Under the pieces are notes generated by a model, which was given only the letters and a program-made list of their open reading frames with translations, had not been told where the DNA came from and ran no database searches. A stretch of 64,000 nucleotides of DNA, from positions 124,001-188,000 of the forward strand of contig DF237001.1 of NCBI GenBank assembly GCA_000708835.1. Direction: 5' to 3'. The DNA is from Klebsormidium nitens (taxonomy: Eukaryota > Plantae > Klebsormidiophyceae). Numbering within the stretch: position 1 is the first letter of the stretch; each line of letters starts with the position of its first letter. Shown one piece after another: positions 27,904 through 36,000 of this stretch. A program made the position numbers and the translations under genes.

Positions 27904-29433
27904 CACTAGCATCGAGTTCTGGCGCGCAACGAGGTGGTATGACGTATCTTGCGACAATTGCTAGCCTGAACGCGGTAATGACTGCCAGGTATTGTATCAT
28001 GTGCTGTGGGACAAGTCGATGTTCACACTGCGCATTGCGGTTTTCCGAGTAAAGTCATTGCCGTCCAAGTTGCATCTCCGGCTTGCAGATGGCATGCCTG
28101 CACCAATCGAAGTCGGATATACGCTTCTAGCTAGCAGGAATCTGTTATGTGAATCGCTGGCAGATGATATTACGATGCTGTTTATCCGATCCTATAAGCT
28201 CGATTTAAGCTTGGCGCCCAGAAGAGACGCCCGACGCTTGAATATGACCCGACAACCGGCCTTACGTCTTGGTGAGCATGCATGTGCGCCGGGTGGAACT
28301 TGGGAACATGCCCGGTCGCGGTCGTGCCAACATCATTCGCAGGGATGCCCTGAGCAAGCGCTTATACAAGTAGCCTTGAAGCCCGGCCTCGTCATCAAAT
28401 TACAACTTTCAAAAAAGAGGGCGGCCTCAGGCGACTGTCTTAGCTAGCCAGCACTGGCCAGGCAGTCGGACAAATTCGAGGAAACGGTCCGTGGATCCTC
28501 AACCAAATACTATGTGTAATACAATCTTAAGGAAACAATCAGATGATTGGCATCTAGGCGCCAGCTCGAGGAACATGACATGATGCATACGTATAGTACC
28601 CTACCTCCTTGTGGCGGGGCTCAGCCAATAATGCAGGCCACTGAGAACCAGGATTTCGAGGCTCAGGCCGCTGCATCAATGCCAGCATATCAAGTCTCTC
28701 ATTCATGGCCCGCACTGAAGAAAGACTCCGGGGCTGATTTTGCATGGGTGTCTAGCTGTTTACTGGATCGAGTCGAGCGTATTATCAATCAGGCACGCTG
28801 ATCCACTCGTAACCTCGTATATTCTGTGTTGCACATGTAGGACGGAGCTTGGGCTAACTTGACACATTGCAAAAGCTGCCCATCATCATATCCTACTCTA
28901 TCAGGCGCGGCCGAGCATAGATTCGTATGTGAATTCGGAATGCAGGGTGCTACGGCTCATTTGATAGACGTTGTATACGTACACTTTCGAGAAGCGTCGG
29001 TCTATTCAAATCCAATCCTCGATAACACTTTAAATTCGAACTCAGTTTGCGCGTGCATATCAATCAGAGTCTGAATAGACTCGCTCTCTGCGATGAGGTC
29101 ACTAGCTTTCTAGAGGTACAACTCGTCTGTATCTTGCGCGGCGCGGTAAAGAAGAGAATACCTTAAAGGCGTACAAACCCAAACCGTCACTAATCCGTTG
29201 TTAACGCAGCACTTTTTGTGGTGCTTTTTCCTGGCCCGCTGAGTCCATACGGACTGCTCTGCTAAAAGCAGACTGACGTCTCCCTCAAACCCCTGACGTC
29301 AGCCATGTAACCCGCAAACAAAACTGGCTGTATAGCCTTTCACTCTTGGAACCAAAACTGACGTTATTCCAACCCTCCATATGCACGAGACTGGCCTCAG
29401 AACTTGTTAACTCAGAAGACGACTGCTGCTCTC

Positions 29434-31383
29434 TTACAAGCAGGGGCTAGCCGGGCAGAGCCCTCCGCAGCTGACGTAATAGTCGGCGAGCCAGCCGACA
29501 GTGCCGTCAGCAGCCTTGCCGTACAGCCAGCGGGCGTCTCCGTTGATGCTCTGACCGTTGGAGTAGCAGTAGATGTTGAAGTTGGTGCCCCTGGGGAGGG
29601 TCTTGATGACGGGGCAGCAGCAGTTGTTGGCGCAGTAAGTGCTGGGTCTGCAGAAGTCTGCAGAAAAAGGAACTAAGAGGTAAGTATGAGGAGGGGACGG
29701 CAGGAGGGGACGGGGGAGAATGCTTCCACTTTTTCTTAGAACAAGGACCGTAGAGCAATTTTGGGTGAGTGAGTGAGCGAGCGAGCTGCGAAGTGGTCAG
29801 ATACGAAAGAATGAGAGATCATGTGACAAGAACAGCTGATATCATTGCGGATACGAAGATGAAGCAACCTGTCAATGTAGCAAATTGGTAAACGTGAAGG
29901 GAAGGATGAACAGTGCAAAAAAGCGATGGGACATTCAGCACTTCACCGGAATCAAGAAAGTTTTCATTGCGCAGGCGCTACCAGTCACTCATCTAAATCG
30001 CAAGATTCCAGGCTATGGGAACACACTTGCAGCCTTCAGAACAAGAGCATAGTCTGGCGAACTTTGAACAAACCATTCGACCCGAACGCTGGAGAGACTG
30101 TGCAGAACGCTTCCCAATTCCAGAGACCCATTTCTTGCTTAAGTTGCTTACATGCAGTCACATGTTTGTACTTTGGAATTTCAAGTCAATCAGAAAGCTG
30201 CCTCCTTCTGTCTTAGAGTTCAGAAGCCACAGAGTCTAACGTGATCGCAAAACTGATTGGGCAATCTGATCAAACTTCTCCACTTGTGCCTTGATAATCT
30301 AAGAGTGCCAGCGTGTCTTTGCAAAAGAAAGATAACTACAAACGAACAACAAAAGCGAACAACTTCATGAGTGACCAAGCTTTGAATTGCTAGGAAAAGT
30401 ACCACAGACATTATGTCCAGGAAGTCGTGAAGGACAAGATAATCTGTTTCTTTCAAGCTGGAGAATAACAACGCCTTAAGCCAGAAGGCCGGTCAAGTCT
30501 GACAGGAGGCATGACGAGATGGCCTCATTCTTAACAATCAGCTGTAGTGAGCCTGTCCTACACTTCACAATTAGGACTTGTGAAACAGATTCATGAAGCT
30601 GGCTTACTGTCAGAGTCGCCGCATCTGCGGATGTTAGTGTTGTCATTGAGAGTGTAGGCCTCCGCAGCCACCAAAAAGCAAGCCAAAATGACCAGTGCCA
30701 CCAGGGACGCCAGCCTGCATAAAGCATCGGACACACATCAGTTCAGCTTGTCAAGAAACAAGAAAATAAGGCCGTCACAGACCAAAGAAGGGACTTCTTT
30801 CCACAAGGGGTTGAAAGGGCTTTTGCTCGTGAGAGAAGAGGAGGAAAAGAGTCGACAGCAATGAGAGATTGCTTTACTTAGTGTAGTTGCTTGATGTCCA
30901 CTAATACAGCTGAAGTGCAAAGGAAGAGCTGGCGCACTGAGGCAGCGTATGCAAGTGTTGTCAGGAGAAGCTTGTACGTGTAAGTCACTGAGGCTTCTGT
31001 CGGTGAGAAGCAGATTCAGACCTGGTGATGTAATACCTATGCACACCACTTTCTATCCTTAGAGAACTGAGTCAGATGAAGTATACCATAATTGAGAAGG
31101 CTTTTCCCAAACTTTTGCTGGTCAAGAAAGAAGTTTCGTGGAAGTTAGACTGCATGAACCATCAGTAACAACGCAGGAACGGAGCTGACAGCAGCTGGCA
31201 GTACTTCAAAGTTCTCATTTATGATCCAGCAATCATATGTGCATTTTTCCATTTTAAAAGGCTGTGGCTGCGCAGATGAACGTGCTGGGAGAAATGAGCA
31301 AATGGACAGCAGCTTGACAATCGATTAGTGCAATGCCGCTGTCATCAATTGAGTGCTTACTTGGAGGAAGAAGAGCGAGCCAT
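29434..31383 (-). CDS. 117-aa secreted cysteine-rich protein consisting of one SH3b-like (bacterial/fungal SH3) domain
   Basis: Exons 31383-31361 (accaccATGG context, GTAAGC donor), 30714-30608 and 29657-29434 join in phase: MARSSSSKLASLVALVILACFLVAAEA/YTLNDNTNIRRCGDSDNFCRPSTYCANNCCCPVIKTLPRGTNFNIYCYSNGQSINGDARWLYGKAADGTVGWLADYYVSCGGLCPASPCL. Hydrophobic signal peptide ending AEA; C/G-ending codon bias. The SH3b call is from recalled motifs. Confidence 0.82.
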
Positions 31384-33095
31384 GGTGGTTGTGTTGCTTC
31401 AAGTACCTCGGCGCCTGTGGAGCGGAGTGAGTAGAAGTGGGTAACTTGCTCTGCTTGAAGGAGGCAACCTTGAACCGATACTGAAAGGACAGGCTTGCTT
31501 CGACTTTGCTTGTGGGGATTGCAATAAGAACGCGCTTCCACTTCGAACAAAGGCACCTGTGTATCACTGTATGAGCTAGCCTTTAGGTCCTAGTCAAGAC
31601 CTGAGCATGGAAAGGCTCGAGTTCGGAGAAGTCGGCATCTCTACGGTTCTCAGTTGACAATCCGCAAGCAGTGAGCAGTGAGCACCGTGACCGAGCACAT
31701 GAGCCTTGAGCTACCAATCATTGATTGGATGCCGGCATAAAAGGAGGAATATTCGAGCTGCCGCAAGTTGCGGACTCCCTTAGTCTCCAGTGCCACTTTT
31801 GCACATCATTTGGCACCATCTGAGGAGGACATGTGGCAAAAATCATCGGGATGATGCGGCTTACTAAAAAGATTCTGTAAGATTTAATAATTGCCAAGGA
31901 TAAGGGTCATGATTGATGTGGTCACCTGGCGATCTGCAAATTGGCTTTTAATAGGTTTGTTCAAGCTTCAAGCTAACCAGGCTAGTCAAGAGGTGGCATA
32001 GGTATTATATATAACACTTGTAACCCGGCTGGTCATCCTGGGGTACCTAACCTCGTCCACTTTAACTAAAGAACCTAACCCAGGATCTCATACGCTCCGC
32101 ACTCCTCCTGATAACTAGAGACACATAGAGACACAAGAGACAAGCTGAGCCGAGTCGACGAGTTCCCCGAGATTAATAGACAAGGGGCTCATTGGCCAAC
32201 GCATCGCTTTGTATTGATATCGTTACTGTTATTGATATTATAGGGACCTGTCGCACAGACTCGTCGCCAAGAAGGTCACTTTTCATATGCACGCTCCATG
32301 CTCTCTCTGCTGTGACAGTTGCGTATAACATGTCCCTACCTGACCCATCATAACGCCGCTGCAACCAAGCAGGTTTTATGTAGGATTAACTGCATTATGC
32401 TGAATGCATTCAAACAAGATCATGATTGTAGTACTGTACTTTCATGGATGAAGTCACATGGTATTCTATATAGCATCGACCGAACTTCGCTGCAAATATG
32501 GATTAATTATCGCGGATGCGCGAAGCTATATATCCTTCCGATAAGATGCATGTGCATCGGATCCAACTTATCCATACGATCAGACTGACGTGGTTTGCAG
32601 AGCATAGTGGTCTCCAAAATCAACTTCATGCACCCACAAGCCAGAGTTGAAATTGTTAAAGTGCTTGAAATGCATTGTGCAATCGCAAATTCAATGCATT
32701 CAGGACTCCGCTTCGTACTTCCTTAGCTTCACAAGCATTCGACCAAAGTGGAAGTGGCTGGAGGAGAACGAATTGGCGGGCGCCAAATATATGATAACTG
32801 CATTAGACATCTGCTCATCATGCAACACTTCAGGACAAGCAATCAGGAAGTGGTAGATGCAATTCCGCCTAAATGGAGGGGTCTGAAAAGTTGTTGAAAA
32901 GCAAAAACCTGGAACAGATGCTGCTAATCTCAATTGCGGAATTTTGACTAGAACGAGGAGCAAAATATTTTACACTCATGCGGAACTATTGCTCAATATC
33001 ACAATCTGCTACTGATTGTCACGACTGCTCGTCGCCAAAGCTGGCGGGGATTGACGGACAAAAAGCTTTCATTTGTGCAGGAAAGGCCTGAATGC

Positions 33096-36000
33096 TCATT
33101 GCAACCATCCAATTTTGAAGAGCGCCTCTCCGGTAAGTGCCTCGATGATAATGAGAGAAACAAACCCTAGCATAGCGAAGCGACCGTTTACTCGTTCCGC
33201 AAAAGAATTGAAGGGACCGAACGGCTTGCTAGGCCGTGTGAGCCCGTCGTCCTCCATCTCGTTTGCTCCTGGTGCATACGAGCTCAGCATGATGACCACG
33301 ATGGTCAGCGGTATGAGCATAACTTGAAGACCTGCAAGCAGAGAGAGCATTGAGGAGACCGTTGGAGGAGACGCCTAAAGAGAAATCGGAACCTAAGAGG
33401 AATTTGGGGTGACGTCAAGAGCCTGGCTTCCAAGCTCTGAGCACGAAAACCGAGGACTAACGGTTCAGATATACGACTACGGTTTTGAACACCCTCAAGC
33501 TCCTGGTTGAGGGACCCCTTCAGAAAACGTTTAGATGCAAGCTTGGACGAGCACACTTGTGTTGAAGAGGATCAGCGCGACGAAGAACCATTCTCCTATC
33601 AAGCTTGCGCAGTTAAGGGGGTTCCTTCACAACAGCTCAATCCTCGTCCACGTAGGCCCGAACGCGCTCACAAATCAAGTAGCGGGAGATGCAAGTGACT
33701 TGCAAAGAGAGCCTCCGTTACAAAAGAAGACTTCGTACGTGCAGAGCCGTGCGAGCGTACAGAAACACTACCCAGTTTAGAACGGGTGGCCCACACAATT
33801 GCTCATTGCCGTCAATCGACACCTACGGAAGTGGTCCTTTGGATCGCAGTTGAGGAGCGCTTAGTGGATGGTTACGAGCTTTCAACGTGCCGGTTCTGGA
33901 AGCCAGCTCAGAGGTTGTCTCGTAGCAGATTCCTGAATGTTCCCTAATGTTCCCTCACGGCATTCCTAACCACCCTGACTATGTTCTCACAGACATGTTC
34001 CGAAGACCATAAAGAGCGACAGCAACGACCGGAACAGACTCTCGGAACATACTCTTGATCAACTCTAAGATGCCGTCGGCCTGCAACTCGGTCAAGGGCA
34101 CTCCTAACGTTTTTTCCGGGCGGTCTCACCTCCCTGGTAGGTGAGCTGCTCCCACACGCTTCGCCCGGTAGTTAGCTCGTTGAACAGGGCCGCCACAAAG
34201 CCCACCATTGCACAGCGGCCGTTGATCATCTCGGGATTTAGACCGCTCTGCGAAGAAAAAGTCCCTTCCTCGTCAGACCACCCATACCTAAGCGCATGAA
34301 GGCAAACCTGCCCTCGCAAAACACATATTGCCTTGAATATCACGGGATTGAACAAGTCCAAAGACAAGGATGAGGAAAAGGCGAGAGAGCCAAATATCGA
34401 GAACACCAATTCTGGCAGCAAAAGATACGGCGGCAAACAGTGTGCGACATGTCAGCACCCTCACCGTGATGAACGAAAACCCCTCTCCCACCTCGCCATA
34501 GTATGCGGCGCGCCTCTGCCGCTTAATCTGCAACAAGAAGAACGGGAGGAATGAATTATGGATTGCAACGAGTTATTTGCTGTAAGTTTGGGTACGGAGT
34601 GAAGTCGAAGGAGCCTTGGTTTAGGTCGATTCGTCGAACTGCTGTACGGATTAATGCGGAGCTCAGCCGCTCACCTTGCGCTGCAACAAAACCGGCCAGG
34701 GTGACTCCCCAGGTGAACGAGAGGGCCAATGGGGAATGAGCCCGACAGAATGATCTGATGGAAAAGGCAGCTTTCTTCTGAGGCAGGCTGACCTTGATGC
34801 AGTGAATGCAACAGATGCGACACAGCACAATTGTAAATCAGTGTTTCTCGCGTTCAAAAATGCTACATGGAGGAAACTGAACGGTTGCTTGTCTGATATA
34901 CCTTCAAGCCCGTCAAAGTGCACGTCTCTACAGACGTCAAATAGGATCGCTGATCGCCTTCACAGACCTAAAGCTAAAGTTCTCAGATTCGACGATCTAA
35001 AATAACTTCAGTACCTGTCCTACAGGAGTCTTGCAGCGACTCAGACTGATTTTTCTGACGTGATGATGTATTTCTGCCGCACACTCAAGTAGCAAAATCA
35101 AGACGACCAAGTCAGCCTAGGGTGAAGCCTGCATCTACCTATGTGTAGATCGCTCAAGCAAATGTTGGCATCAACTTAGGGCGACTTTCAAAACCCAAGT
35201 CTTCCACACTCGTATGACAGGTGATCGGGCAGTGGTAAGTGCAAAGAGTTGAGACGATATCGCACCTGCCTAATCCTCGCCCTGATTCTTCTAGACTGCT
35301 CCAGCAGCTCCTCTCGCGTCACCTCCCGCTGCGGGCCCCGCCTGGCCCTCCAGTCTCTCCCGCTTGAGTACCCGTCTTCTTCAAATGGCTGATCCGGTGG
35401 GGGGGGAGCATTCGGTGGTGGCCCCCAATTTTCAGGATTTTGGCGTGGCCTATTTGGAGGGGGGGTAGAATAGGGAGAATCCTGTTGTGCGTCTGTGTTT
35501 GGGGGTGGGGGGGCTTGACGGGGGTCAGGCTGAGGGGGTATCCGGATGCGAGGGTCTTGGCGCCGTTGCCGGTTTCTGCCCTGGAAAAGGAGGAGGGGCA
35601 CTCGATTGGCTTGTTGTAACGTGCACCAGTAAAATAGATGGTATACAGATATTGTGTGAGGTTCGGCGGCATTGGTTGTCGATTGCTCAACCGGAGGCAG
35701 ATGCGTCAATTCAGCAAAGCCGCTGGCCTGGCAGAGCTACTGCCACTCACAGCGAAATTGTAGAACTCTATACGGACCATTTCTGTCGGAAGCAATTGGG
35801 CAGAAACAGCAACCTGCAGTCACCTAAGAAGTTGCGACAACTTTCTGTATGGCTGCTTTTGAAGTATTGTTACTGCAATCTAACACGAGTTTCAAGAACC
35901 ACCTGGGGGCTTGTTACTTGTATCGCATCAAGATATGAAGAAAGGGCTTTAATCTTAGACCTGAACTGCTGGTTATGCAGGGAAGGCGTGCAGTGTAAGC

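What the first reader, a model, noticed from the sequence alone, without database searches (positions are those of the whole stretch)
29434..31383. Stand-alone secreted SH3b-like miniprotein with a six-cysteine loop insertion
Seen: a clean three-exon gene that the ORF track misses, encoding a signal peptide and a 90-aa mature peptide with 10 Cys. Known: NxR...V+..L..G....I.C...G..+NG...W......G++ADYYV is the pattern I recall for actinobacterial and fungal SH3b domains, which usually target bacterial peptidoglycan and are fused to NlpC/P60 or amidase domains. Here there is no catalytic partner, and the short SGPGTxY-type loop after NIR is replaced by RCGDSDNFCRPSTYCANNCCC, which includes a CCC triplet. 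Inference: a disulfide-knotted or metal-binding module grafted on a cell-wall-binding fold, possibly an undescribed algal antibacterial, lectin-like or microbiome-sensing peptide of horizontal origin.
Basis: partly seen in the sequence, partly recalled or inferred. Interest (0 to 1): 0.75.

Follow-up and report, generated by a model that had tools for sequence, protein, structure and literature searches.

The report
Secreted stand-alone SH3b protein, cysteine-stapled loop
The alga Klebsormidium nitens has a real three-exon gene for a small secreted protein with a bacterial-type cell-wall-binding SH3 fold and no enzyme attached; its ligand-facing loop is enlarged and locked by extra cysteines, and it belongs to an unstudied family shared with liverworts and mosses whose closest relatives are small actinobacterial proteins.

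Summary
A minus-strand gene (31383..29434) has three exons and two GT..AG introns. It encodes 117 aa: a 27-aa signal peptide and a 90-aa mature protein with 10 Cys. It is identical to the annotated but uncharacterised KFL_000520240 of Klebsormidium nitens.

The SH3b reading is supported:
- Pfam SH3_3 is below threshold (13.6 bits; cut-off 27).
- phmmer against PDB hits fungal muramidase SH3-like cell-wall-binding domains (E 1.6e-5; family profile E 7e-11).
- The AlphaFold model superposes on them at Z 11.6, rmsd 1.6 A, over 72 of 74 residues.

The protein is stand-alone.

The six-Cys segment (C-x6-C-x5-C-x3-CCC) lies in the RT loop. It is not a foreign graft. It elaborates a long, disulfide-closed RT loop already present in relatives. 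It is also the best-conserved part: 70% identity to Marchantia, against 36-40% for the rest.

Orthologues exist in Marchantia, Physcomitrium and Ceratodon, with a shared phase-2 intron. The nearest non-plant relatives are stand-alone secreted proteins of Actinomycetota. Transfer from bacteria is likely, but the donor is not proven.

Function is untested. The most likely role is a non-catalytic extracellular binder of bacterial peptidoglycan. I class it as a new variant of a known kind, of moderate interest.

The parts
31361..31383 (-). Exon 1: start codon plus the first 7 and 2/3 codons (n-region of the signal peptide). It ends in phase 2 before GTAAGC.
   Evidence: The N-terminus of P0001 is identical. 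A phase-2 intron at the equivalent place occurs in Marchantia and Physcomitrium.
30715..31360 (-). Intron 1 (646 nt, GTAAGC...TTTATGCAG, GC 0.45)
30608..30714 (-). Exon 2 (107 nt): the rest of the signal peptide (to 30657), the mature N-terminus from Tyr28 (30656), the N-I-R strand, and the start of the Cys loop (C39 at 30623..30621)
29658..30607 (-). Intron 2 (950 nt, GTAAGC...TTCTGCAG, phase 1). It lies inside the loop, between D43 and N44, and is absent from the Marchantia and Physcomitrium genes.
29434..29657 (-). Exon 3 (224 nt including the TAA stop at 29436..29434): the rest of the Cys loop and the whole SH3 barrel with the C-terminal C-G-G-x-C-P-x3-C tail
   Evidence: The exon alone recovers P0001 at 100% identity. 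dN/dS is 0.19 against the L001 relative.
29614..29657 (-). Exon-3 part of the RT-loop elaboration (N44 to C58, including the CCC triplet at C56-C58). Together with 30608..30623 it encodes C39-C58, with spacing C-x6-C-x5-C-x3-CCC.
   Evidence: Alignment A1. Loop identity is 90% to P0002 and 70% to Marchantia, against 66% and 36-40% for the rest of the domain.
29437..29613 (-). SH3b beta-barrel core (residues 59-117). AlphaFold pLDDT is 85-92.
   Evidence: Z 11.6, rmsd 1.6 A, 72 residues aligned to 8b2f_A

Best explanation
The locus is a spliced nuclear gene of Klebsormidium nitens. It encodes a small protein that enters the secretory pathway through a cleavable signal peptide. The protein folds as a single bacterial-type SH3 (SH3b) beta-barrel stabilised by about five disulfides.

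Inferred: one disulfide (C74-C116) corresponds to Cys33-Cys72 of the fungal crystal structures. C39-C58 closes the enlarged RT loop, as in moss and actinobacterial relatives. C107-C111 staples the C-terminal tail. The four extra loop cysteines (C46, C52, C56, C57) cross-link the loop into a rigid knob.

The RT loop flanks the peptide-binding groove in SH3b domains, and here it is the most conserved segment. I therefore take the protein to be a non-catalytic extracellular binding module whose specificity lies in the stapled loop. The most likely ligand is the peptide moiety of bacterial peptidoglycan, with the protein acting as an agglutinin, a sensor cofactor or a blocker of wall remodelling at the algal surface.

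The gene most likely descends from a stand-alone secreted SH3b protein of Actinomycetota, acquired before the Klebsormidiophyceae-land plant split.
For: Gene model.

SH3b homology:
- phmmer against PDB gives 8b2h_A at E 1.6e-5.
- The family profile gives 8b2f_A at E 7.2e-11, with C74 and C116 aligned to the fungal Cys33 and Cys72.
- Foldseek's top three hits are the fungal cell-wall-binding domains, with target TM 0.78-0.81 for the two isolated domain chains (8b2g_A, 8b2f_A).
- VIA-align gives Z 11.6, rmsd 1.6 A over 72 of 74 residues. The next hits are SH3b domains of NlpC/P60 enzymes, an endolysin and LytB at Z 7-8.
- The ESM Atlas structure neighbours are fungal GH24, CHAP and NlpC/P60 proteins and small actinobacterial SH3b proteins.

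Ligand precedent: the fungal domain binds triglycine near the conserved Arg next to the RT loop (PMC10394673). An Arg is kept in the N-x-R motif of all streptophyte members with the loop.

Stand-alone status: an intron-less 1.1-kb contig of a 68-71% identical relative (L001, read) carries the same open reading frame with untranslated flanks and no other domain; a second contig, L002, carries the same 101-aa product.

Selection: dN/dS is 0.19 over exon 3, and the loop is better conserved than the barrel.

Family: Marchantia polymorpha and M. paleacea have the identical Cys spacing. Physcomitrium has three paralogues and Ceratodon has members. A phase-2 intron just before the hydrophobic core of the signal peptide occurs in all three genomes examined. 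The Physcomitrium orthologue occurs as a spliced form in SRA assemblies (90 contigs on record; one, L006, was read).

Bacterial kin: 13 of 13 genome loci found with the actinobacterial profile are Actinomycetota. In the tree the streptophyte group (94/91) is sister to that clade (99/98), joined at 86/76.
Against: - No binding or localisation data exist for any family member.
- Pfam SH3_3 is below its gathering score (13.6-14.9 bits against 27).
- The loop itself is modelled with low confidence (pLDDT about 50-60).
- The RT loop is so rebuilt that specificity may have moved away from peptidoglycan.
- The actinobacterial relatives sit next to STAND NTPases rather than wall hydrolases, which does not point to wall metabolism.
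- The AU test does not reject a single clade of streptophyte plus fungal-type domains (p 0.18), so the actinobacterial donor is only the best guess.
- I found no direct K. nitens RNA evidence.
Confidence: 0.45

Rival explanations
1. The fold is the same but the ligand differs. The stapled RT loop has retargeted the SH3b scaffold to a non-peptidoglycan partner, such as a component of the plant or algal cell wall or matrix, a fungal wall polymer, or a receptor. The protein would then be a structural matrix protein or a secreted cysteine-rich signalling peptide.
For: The specificity loop is the part that is most changed from bacterial and fungal SH3b domains, and it is the part most conserved within the Klebsormidium/Marchantia lineage. 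Loops differ strongly between lineages: mosses carry an acidic D-x-D-x-D-G-like loop, and some members have short plain loops, as expected for diversifying ligands. The actinobacterial relatives neighbour nSTAND1-WD40 and NB-ARC-TPR proteins, not wall enzymes.
Against: Every characterised close relative is a peptidoglycan-targeting module (PMC10394673; the PDB neighbours). The conserved Arg of the N-x-R motif is retained. No candidate partner is known.
Confidence: 0.3
2. It is a direct antimicrobial peptide. The disulfide-rich 90-aa protein would kill or inhibit microbes itself, in the manner of a defensin or snakin, with the SH3b barrel serving only as a stable scaffold.
For: It is small, secreted and has 10 Cys, like plant antimicrobial cysteine-rich peptides. 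An earlier scan note, untested here, says the genome also holds other secreted bacterial-type wall-targeting proteins (s1-267522).
Against: The mature protein is not notably cationic or amphipathic by eye. There is no similarity to any known antimicrobial peptide family: Pfam and PDB hits are SH3 domains, apart from a few weak antibody-chain rows in the profile search. Non-catalytic SH3b domains alone are not known to be lytic.
Confidence: 0.1
3. It is a metal-binding module. The CCC triplet and neighbouring cysteines would coordinate Zn, Cu or Cd as thiolates rather than forming disulfides.
For: The Cys density, including a CCC triplet, recalls metallothionein-like clusters. Zinc was seen in the fungal domain crystals and affected stability (PMC10394673).
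Against: The protein carries a secretory signal peptide, so it folds in an oxidising compartment. The Cys count is even (10) in Klebsormidium, in its close relative and in Marchantia. Moss orthologues lack the four extra Cys but keep the long loop. The zinc in the fungal crystals was coordinated by the ligand peptide, not by Cys.
Confidence: 0.05
4. It is an artefact: bacterial contamination, a pseudogene or a chance ORF arrangement.
For: No K. nitens transcript was seen directly with the tools available.
Against: The gene has two canonical spliceosomal introns and exon/intron GC contrast. A chlorophyll a/b-binding-type exon lies 2.7 kb away on the same strand. Orthologues sit in three bryophyte genomes with a shared intron position. 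dN/dS is 0.19. The reading frame is intact.
Confidence: 0.02

Closest known systems
[quoted passage not shown] 2023, PMC10394673)
   Same: It is the best sequence and structure match: E 1.6e-5 with the single sequence, 7.2e-11 with the profile, and Z 11.6 with rmsd 1.6 A over the whole 73-aa domain. Both are eukaryotic and secreted. The I-x-C to C-terminal-Cys disulfide positions, the A-D-Y-Y-V strand and the N-x-R Arg are shared.
   Different: The fungal domain is always fused to a peptidoglycan hydrolase (GH24, GH184, amidase, C40, M23 or GH73), whereas this protein is stand-alone. The fungal Cys9-Cys53 bridge has no counterpart here, because the D-G-C cysteine is absent. The fungal RT loop is the short S-x-P-S-T-S type. 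In the tree the fungal-type domains fall in a different group, although one joint clade is not rejected.
Stand-alone secreted SH3b proteins of Actinomycetota with the R-D-C-Y-H-P motif (uncharacterised; e.g. Amycolatopsis, Streptomyces, Micromonospora, Pseudonocardiaceae; P0026, P0038, P0059-P0083)
   Same: The architecture is the same: a signal peptide plus one SH3b domain, 113-185 aa in total. Both have a long RT loop bracketed by two cysteines at the same alignment columns as C39 and C58, and both have the I-C-Q and C-terminal cysteines. This clade is the nearest clade in the tree.
   Different: These proteins have only 4 Cys. They lack the C-G-G-x-x-C-P tail, the inner loop cysteines and the acidic D-S-D-N motif. 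Their Y-H-P motif is absent from the plant proteins. They are bacterial and have no introns. Their function is also unknown.
Canonical bacterial and phage SH3b targeting domains (Pfam SH3_3 PF08239; lysostaphin/ALE-1 SH3b; endolysin Psm 4krt; LytB; Trichomonas NlpC 6biq)
   Same: The beta-barrel fold is the same (Z 7-8.2), and there is weak SH3_3 profile similarity. Stand-alone SH3 proteins also exist in phage lysis modules (PMC13164509, seen; title only, not read).
   Different: These domains have no disulfides, have short RT loops and are usually fused to a catalytic domain. Pfam's gathering score is not reached by the Klebsormidium protein.

Membership tests
Bacterial SH3 / SH3b superfamily (Pfam SH3_3 PF08239, SH3 clan) | Score at or above the Pfam gathering threshold (27 bits) | tested here: not met
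   P0001 scores 13.6 bits (E 0.08) and exon 3 alone scores 14.9 bits (E 0.031). The close relative P0002 scores 25.6 bits. Several actinobacterial relatives carry precomputed PF08239 hits.
Bacterial SH3 / SH3b superfamily (Pfam SH3_3 PF08239, SH3 clan) | Five- to seven-stranded SH3-type beta-barrel | tested here: met
   The AlphaFold2 model has pLDDT 85-92 over residues 60-117. VIA-align gives Z 11.6 to 8b2f_A and Z 5-8 to many SH3b and SH3 chains. The Foldseek top list is almost all SH3 or SH3b domains.
Bacterial SH3 / SH3b superfamily (Pfam SH3_3 PF08239, SH3 clan) | Significant sequence homology to a solved SH3b domain | tested here: met
   phmmer gives E 1.6e-5 to 8b2h_A. The family profile gives E 7.2e-11 to 8b2f_A.
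Fungal muramidase-type SH3-like CWBD (Moroz et al. 2023) | Two conserved disulfides, Cys9-Cys53 and Cys33-Cys72 | tested here: not met
   The Cys33 and Cys72 equivalents are present (C74 and C116 align). The Cys53 position (D-G-C) is Thr/Val in the streptophyte proteins, and the first Cys lies after rather than before the conserved Arg. Only one of the two bridges can be homologous.
Fungal muramidase-type SH3-like CWBD (Moroz et al. 2023) | Appended to a peptidoglycan-degrading catalytic domain | tested here: not met
   The 117-aa protein has a signal peptide at residue 1 and a stop after the last conserved Cys. The same holds for all small orthologues, and the transcript-like contig L001 read shows untranslated flanks and no other domain.
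Fungal muramidase-type SH3-like CWBD (Moroz et al. 2023) | Binds a peptide (triglycine) mimic of a peptidoglycan cross-bridge near the RT loop | not testable with these tools
   This needs binding assays or a co-crystal. Only the retention of the Arg in the N-x-R motif could be seen.
Actinobacterial stand-alone R-D-C-Y-H-P SH3b proteins | Signal peptide plus a single SH3b domain, an RT loop bracketed by two Cys, plus the I-C-Q and C-terminal Cys | tested here: met
   In alignments A1 and doms.afa, C39, C58, C74 and C116 occupy the four invariant Cys columns of the actinobacterial clade. The two groups are sister clades with 86/76 support.
Actinobacterial stand-alone R-D-C-Y-H-P SH3b proteins | The invariant Y-H-P after the first Cys and the N-T-G tail motif | tested here: not met
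   These are invariant in A2. They are replaced by G-D-S-D and C-G-G in the Klebsormidium protein.
   Loop pLDDT is about 50-60 and no coordinates were returned. No Pfam or PDB hit covers the loop. Connectivity needs disulfide mapping or an experimental structure.

The most novel reading that the evidence does not exclude
The family is an ancient streptophyte peptidoglycan-recognition or antibacterial module that is not LysM-based. On this reading it was captured from Actinomycetota before the Klebsormidiophyceae-embryophyte split. It was kept in liverworts and mosses, and no vascular-plant member has turned up so far. Its disulfide-stapled, acidic RT loop would be a new solution for reading bacterial wall peptides at the plant surface. 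It would then be an early component of plant-microbe interaction during terrestrialisation. A still bolder variant, at about 3%, is that it acts on the plastid peptidoglycan layer that these same lineages retain.
Probability: 0.25. Interest if true: 0.75.

Novelty: new variant of a known kind. Interest (0 to 1): 0.55.

Why it matters
SH3b domains are the classic aiming devices of bacterial, phage and fungal wall-lytic enzymes. Here one exists on its own in the secretome of a streptophyte alga and of bryophytes. It carries introns and is under purifying selection, and its specificity loop is rebuilt and locked by cysteines whose spacing is unchanged between an alga and a liverwort.

If it binds peptidoglycan, it adds a second, non-LysM route by which early land-plant lineages could sense, agglutinate or disarm bacteria. 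It would also be another bacterial gene recruited around terrestrialisation.

The stapled loop on a 60-residue barrel is also an attractive minimal scaffold for engineering binders. No paper in the searchable library mentions any of the gene identifiers, so genetics in Marchantia and Physcomitrium could test the function directly.

Tried and rejected
- Pfam and NCBIfam on the exons gave only sub-threshold SH3_3, SH3_16 and GsmA hits, so they are not decisive alone.
- tblastn of P0001 and P0002 on the window found no paralogue in the 64 kb.
- Foldseek E-values were weak (1.4e-3), as expected for a small domain with a signal peptide. VIA-align resolved this.
- Literature searches for the gene identifiers, and for SH3b with Marchantia, Physcomitrium, Klebsormidium or horizontal transfer, found nothing relevant. 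One of these searches was badly posed and uninformative.
- AU tests could not reject streptophyte monophyly (p 0.26) or a joint streptophyte plus fungal-type clade (p 0.18). A third test did not finish. I therefore reject any firm statement about the donor.
- ORFs of 90 aa or more within about 10 kb were scanned for a catalytic partner. None was found; only a chlorophyll a/b-binding-type exon turned up.
- L013 (P0039) looks like a genomic read-through of a related gene in another organism and was not pursued.
- The joined spliced model was never typed or assembled by me. The exons were searched by reference, and the full-length analyses used the database record P0001 that the exon-3 search returned.
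- Contamination and pseudogene readings were rejected; see the rival explanations.
Full report
**The gene**

The finding lies on the minus strand. Reading 29200-31700 and translating the three pieces by reference gives:
- an ATG at 31383 and a 23-nt first exon ending AA|GTAAGC;
- a 646-nt intron ending in CAG;
- a 107-nt second exon (30714..30608) followed by GTAAGC;
- a 950-nt intron ending in CAG;
- a 224-nt last exon (29657..29434) ending in TAA.

The phases fit (23 + 107 + 224 = 354 nt). Exons are GC-richer than introns (0.56-0.61 against 0.45), and GC3 of exon 3 is 0.86.

A word search with exon 3 alone returned a 117-aa database protein, P0001: "hypothetical protein KFL_000520240 [Klebsormidium nitens]", auto-named "SH3 domain-containing protein" in UniRef. 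It is 100% identical to exon 3. Its sequence matches what the three exons encode piece by piece, and tblastn of P0001 back on the window finds exons 2 and 3. All full-length analyses used that record.

The product has a typical signal peptide: a basic n-region, a 16-residue hydrophobic core and A-E-A before Tyr28. I judged this by eye. The mature part is 90 aa with ten cysteines.

A chlorophyll a/b-binding-type exon lies 2.7 kb away on the same strand. This is consistent with a nuclear region of a photosynthetic eukaryote.

**The fold**

Pfam SH3_3 is hit only below threshold (13.6-14.9 bits, cut-off 27). The only NCBIfam hit is a weak match to the SH3 part of GsmA. Stronger tests settle it:
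- A profile of 14 family members raises this to E 7.2e-11. It aligns C74 and C116 with the fungal Cys33 and Cys72.
- An AlphaFold2 model built on that alignment has pLDDT 85-92 across residues 60-117, but only about 50-60 in the Cys loop.
- Foldseek ranks the three fungal domains first.
- VIA-align gives Z 11.6, rmsd 1.6 A over 72 of 74 residues. This is well above the next tier (Z 7-8.2), which consists of SH3b domains of NlpC/P60 enzymes, a clostridial phage endolysin and LytB.
- The ESM Atlas agrees.

According to Moroz et al. 2023 (PMC10394673), the fungal domain is a 73-aa SH3-like module with two disulfides. It binds triglycine next to a conserved Arg and always accompanies a peptidoglycan hydrolase.

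**The loop**

Against canonical SH3b domains (short loop of the R-S-G-P-S-T-S type), the Klebsormidium protein keeps the Arg and the P-S-T core. It adds a Cys-flanked extension on each side, giving C-x6-C-x5-C-x3-CCC (C39 to C58). This is the RT loop, which borders the peptide-binding groove in SH3b domains.

Alignment A1 shows that the first Cys and the last Cys of the triplet occupy columns that are also Cys in moss and actinobacterial relatives. The loop was therefore already long and, presumably, disulfide-closed. Only four cysteines are new. It is an elaboration, not a graft.

The loop is the most conserved part of the protein. Identity is 90% to the closest relative and 70% to Marchantia, against 66% and 36-40% for the rest of the domain. 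The Cys spacing is identical in Klebsormidium and Marchantia.

Over exon 3, dN/dS against the closest relative is 0.19.

Disulfide pairing could not be read from the model because no coordinates were returned. C74-C116 is inferred by homology; the others are inferred by elimination.

**The family**

An exhaustive HMMER search of 1.8 billion cluster representatives found 45 relatives at E <= 1e-3. Two profile word-searches added more.

Small secreted members with the eukaryote-type C-G-G-x-x-C-P-x3-C tail that carry an organism name all come from Klebsormidium nitens or from bryophytes:
- Marchantia polymorpha (Mp5g08700 / MARPO_0086s0074) and M. paleacea. M. paleacea also has a second, divergent paralogue.
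- Physcomitrium patens, with three paralogues.
- Ceratodon purpureus.

Further unnamed members come from SRA and JGI assemblies.

P0002 is 68-71% identical to the Klebsormidium protein. It is encoded without interruption on two 1.1-kb JGI contigs; the one I read (L001) has long untranslated flanks. These look like transcripts of a related alga and run straight across both Klebsormidium splice junctions.

The Marchantia and Physcomitrium genes each have a single phase-2 intron just before the hydrophobic core of the signal peptide, at codons 6 and 8. Klebsormidium intron 1 is in the same phase and place (codon 8). This argues for vertical descent from a common streptophyte ancestor.

The Physcomitrium genomic copy has the intron. 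An SRA assembly contig read here (L006), one of 90 contigs on record for this protein, carries the spliced form, so that orthologue is expressed.

Moss loops lack the four extra cysteines and carry an acidic D-x-D-x-D-G-like motif. A few members have short plain loops.

No vascular-plant member was seen. The searches are not exhaustive for eukaryotes, so absence is not established.

**Bacterial relatives and origin**

The nearest non-plant relatives form a large, uniform set of 113-185-aa secreted proteins. Each has one SH3b domain, an invariant R-D-C-Y-H-P motif and four cysteines. All 13 genome loci found with their profile are Actinomycetota.

A maximum-likelihood tree was built from 64 domain sequences over 92 columns. 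Eleven duplicates and fragments were left out. The rows had been chosen by searches seeded with the plant and actinobacterial proteins. The tree places the streptophyte group (94/91, including one long-branch Streptomyces protein) as sister to this actinobacterial clade (99/98). The join has 86/76 support. The fungal-type domains fall elsewhere, with multi-domain actinobacterial proteins.

The data are too short to be decisive. AU tests reject neither streptophyte monophyly (p 0.26) nor a single clade of streptophyte plus fungal-type domains (p 0.18).

Bacterial-to-streptophyte transfer of an already stand-alone gene is the most economical reading, because the wider family is overwhelmingly bacterial. 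The donor is not proven.

**Function**

Nothing is known experimentally for any member. No paper in the searchable library mentions the gene identifiers or an SH3b protein in these plants.

By analogy with all characterised neighbours, the protein is most likely a non-catalytic extracellular binder of the peptide part of bacterial peptidoglycan, with specificity residing in the stapled loop. I give this about 45%.

The main rival, at about 30%, is that the rebuilt loop has retargeted the scaffold to another ligand. Two points favour this: the loops diverge between lineages, and the actinobacterial relatives lie beside STAND NTPases rather than wall enzymes.

The remaining readings are less likely:
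- Direct antimicrobial action, about 10%.
- Metal binding, about 5%. The secretory route, the even Cys count and the moss sequences argue against it.
- Artefact, about 2%.

That would fit a broader set of acquired wall-targeting proteins.

**Verdict**

It is a new variant of a known kind: an SH3b cell-wall-binding-type domain that is stand-alone, disulfide-rich, and conserved from a streptophyte alga to bryophytes. The gene is already in databases as a hypothetical protein but is uncharacterised.

One tool, the look-up of encoding contigs, was closed from then on.

Noticed in passing
L015:1011-4835 (+), L016:743-4723 (+), L018:554-4525 (+); homologous ORFs at L014:2275-4719 (-) and L022:801-4556 (-): In 5 of 13 actinobacterial loci, a 1270-1330-aa nSTAND1 (PF20703) plus WD40 protein lies immediately upstream of the small stand-alone SH3b gene. 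This holds across Pseudonocardiaceae and Micromonosporaceae. NB-ARC/TPR or BTAD-NB-ARC-TPR proteins are nearby in at least two other loci (L014:5670-7934, L023:2039-4810; ORFs that cluster with them in L017 and L025 were not scanned). This suggests a possible functional link between a STAND NTPase and a secreted SH3b protein.
   Followed up: partly
Proteins P0006, P0058, P0009, P0084, P0085 (moss-type members); compare window 30608-30623 (-): The moss RT loops carry an acidic D-x-D-x-D/N-G motif right after the first loop Cys, which resembles calcium-binding loops. Klebsormidium and Marchantia keep a related G-D-S-D-N/S stretch at the same place. This may point to Ca2+ or a basic ligand.
   Followed up: no
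window 34107-34436 (-): An ORF with a chlorophyll a/b-binding (ELIP/OHP-like) helix motif (Pfam PF00504, E 7e-5) is probably an exon of a neighbouring light-harvesting-like gene. It lies 2.7 kb upstream of the SH3b gene on the same strand.
   Followed up: partly
L013:3001-3276 (+) (SRA run SRR22405823, GC 0.60): The gene call P0039 looks like a genomic read-through of an intron in a related gene of another organism. It keeps a CCC triplet and an identical V-S-C-G-G-L-C-P tail, but the intron appears to sit in a different position.
   Followed up: partly
P0046 (Marchantia paleacea Mapa_005232, 206 aa): This is a second, divergent paralogue type in Marchantia. It has a different three-Cys loop and an extra Cys pair in the distal region, which shows lineage-specific reshaping of the loops. 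The long N-terminal extension may be a mis-annotation.
   Followed up: no
P0008, P0031, P0034 (unnamed metagenomic proteins): These proteins are tandem arrays of two or three domains carrying the fungal-type D-G-C plus C-terminal Cys signature, with no recognisable catalytic domain in the parts aligned. If they are fungal, they would be CWBD-only repeat proteins.
   Followed up: no
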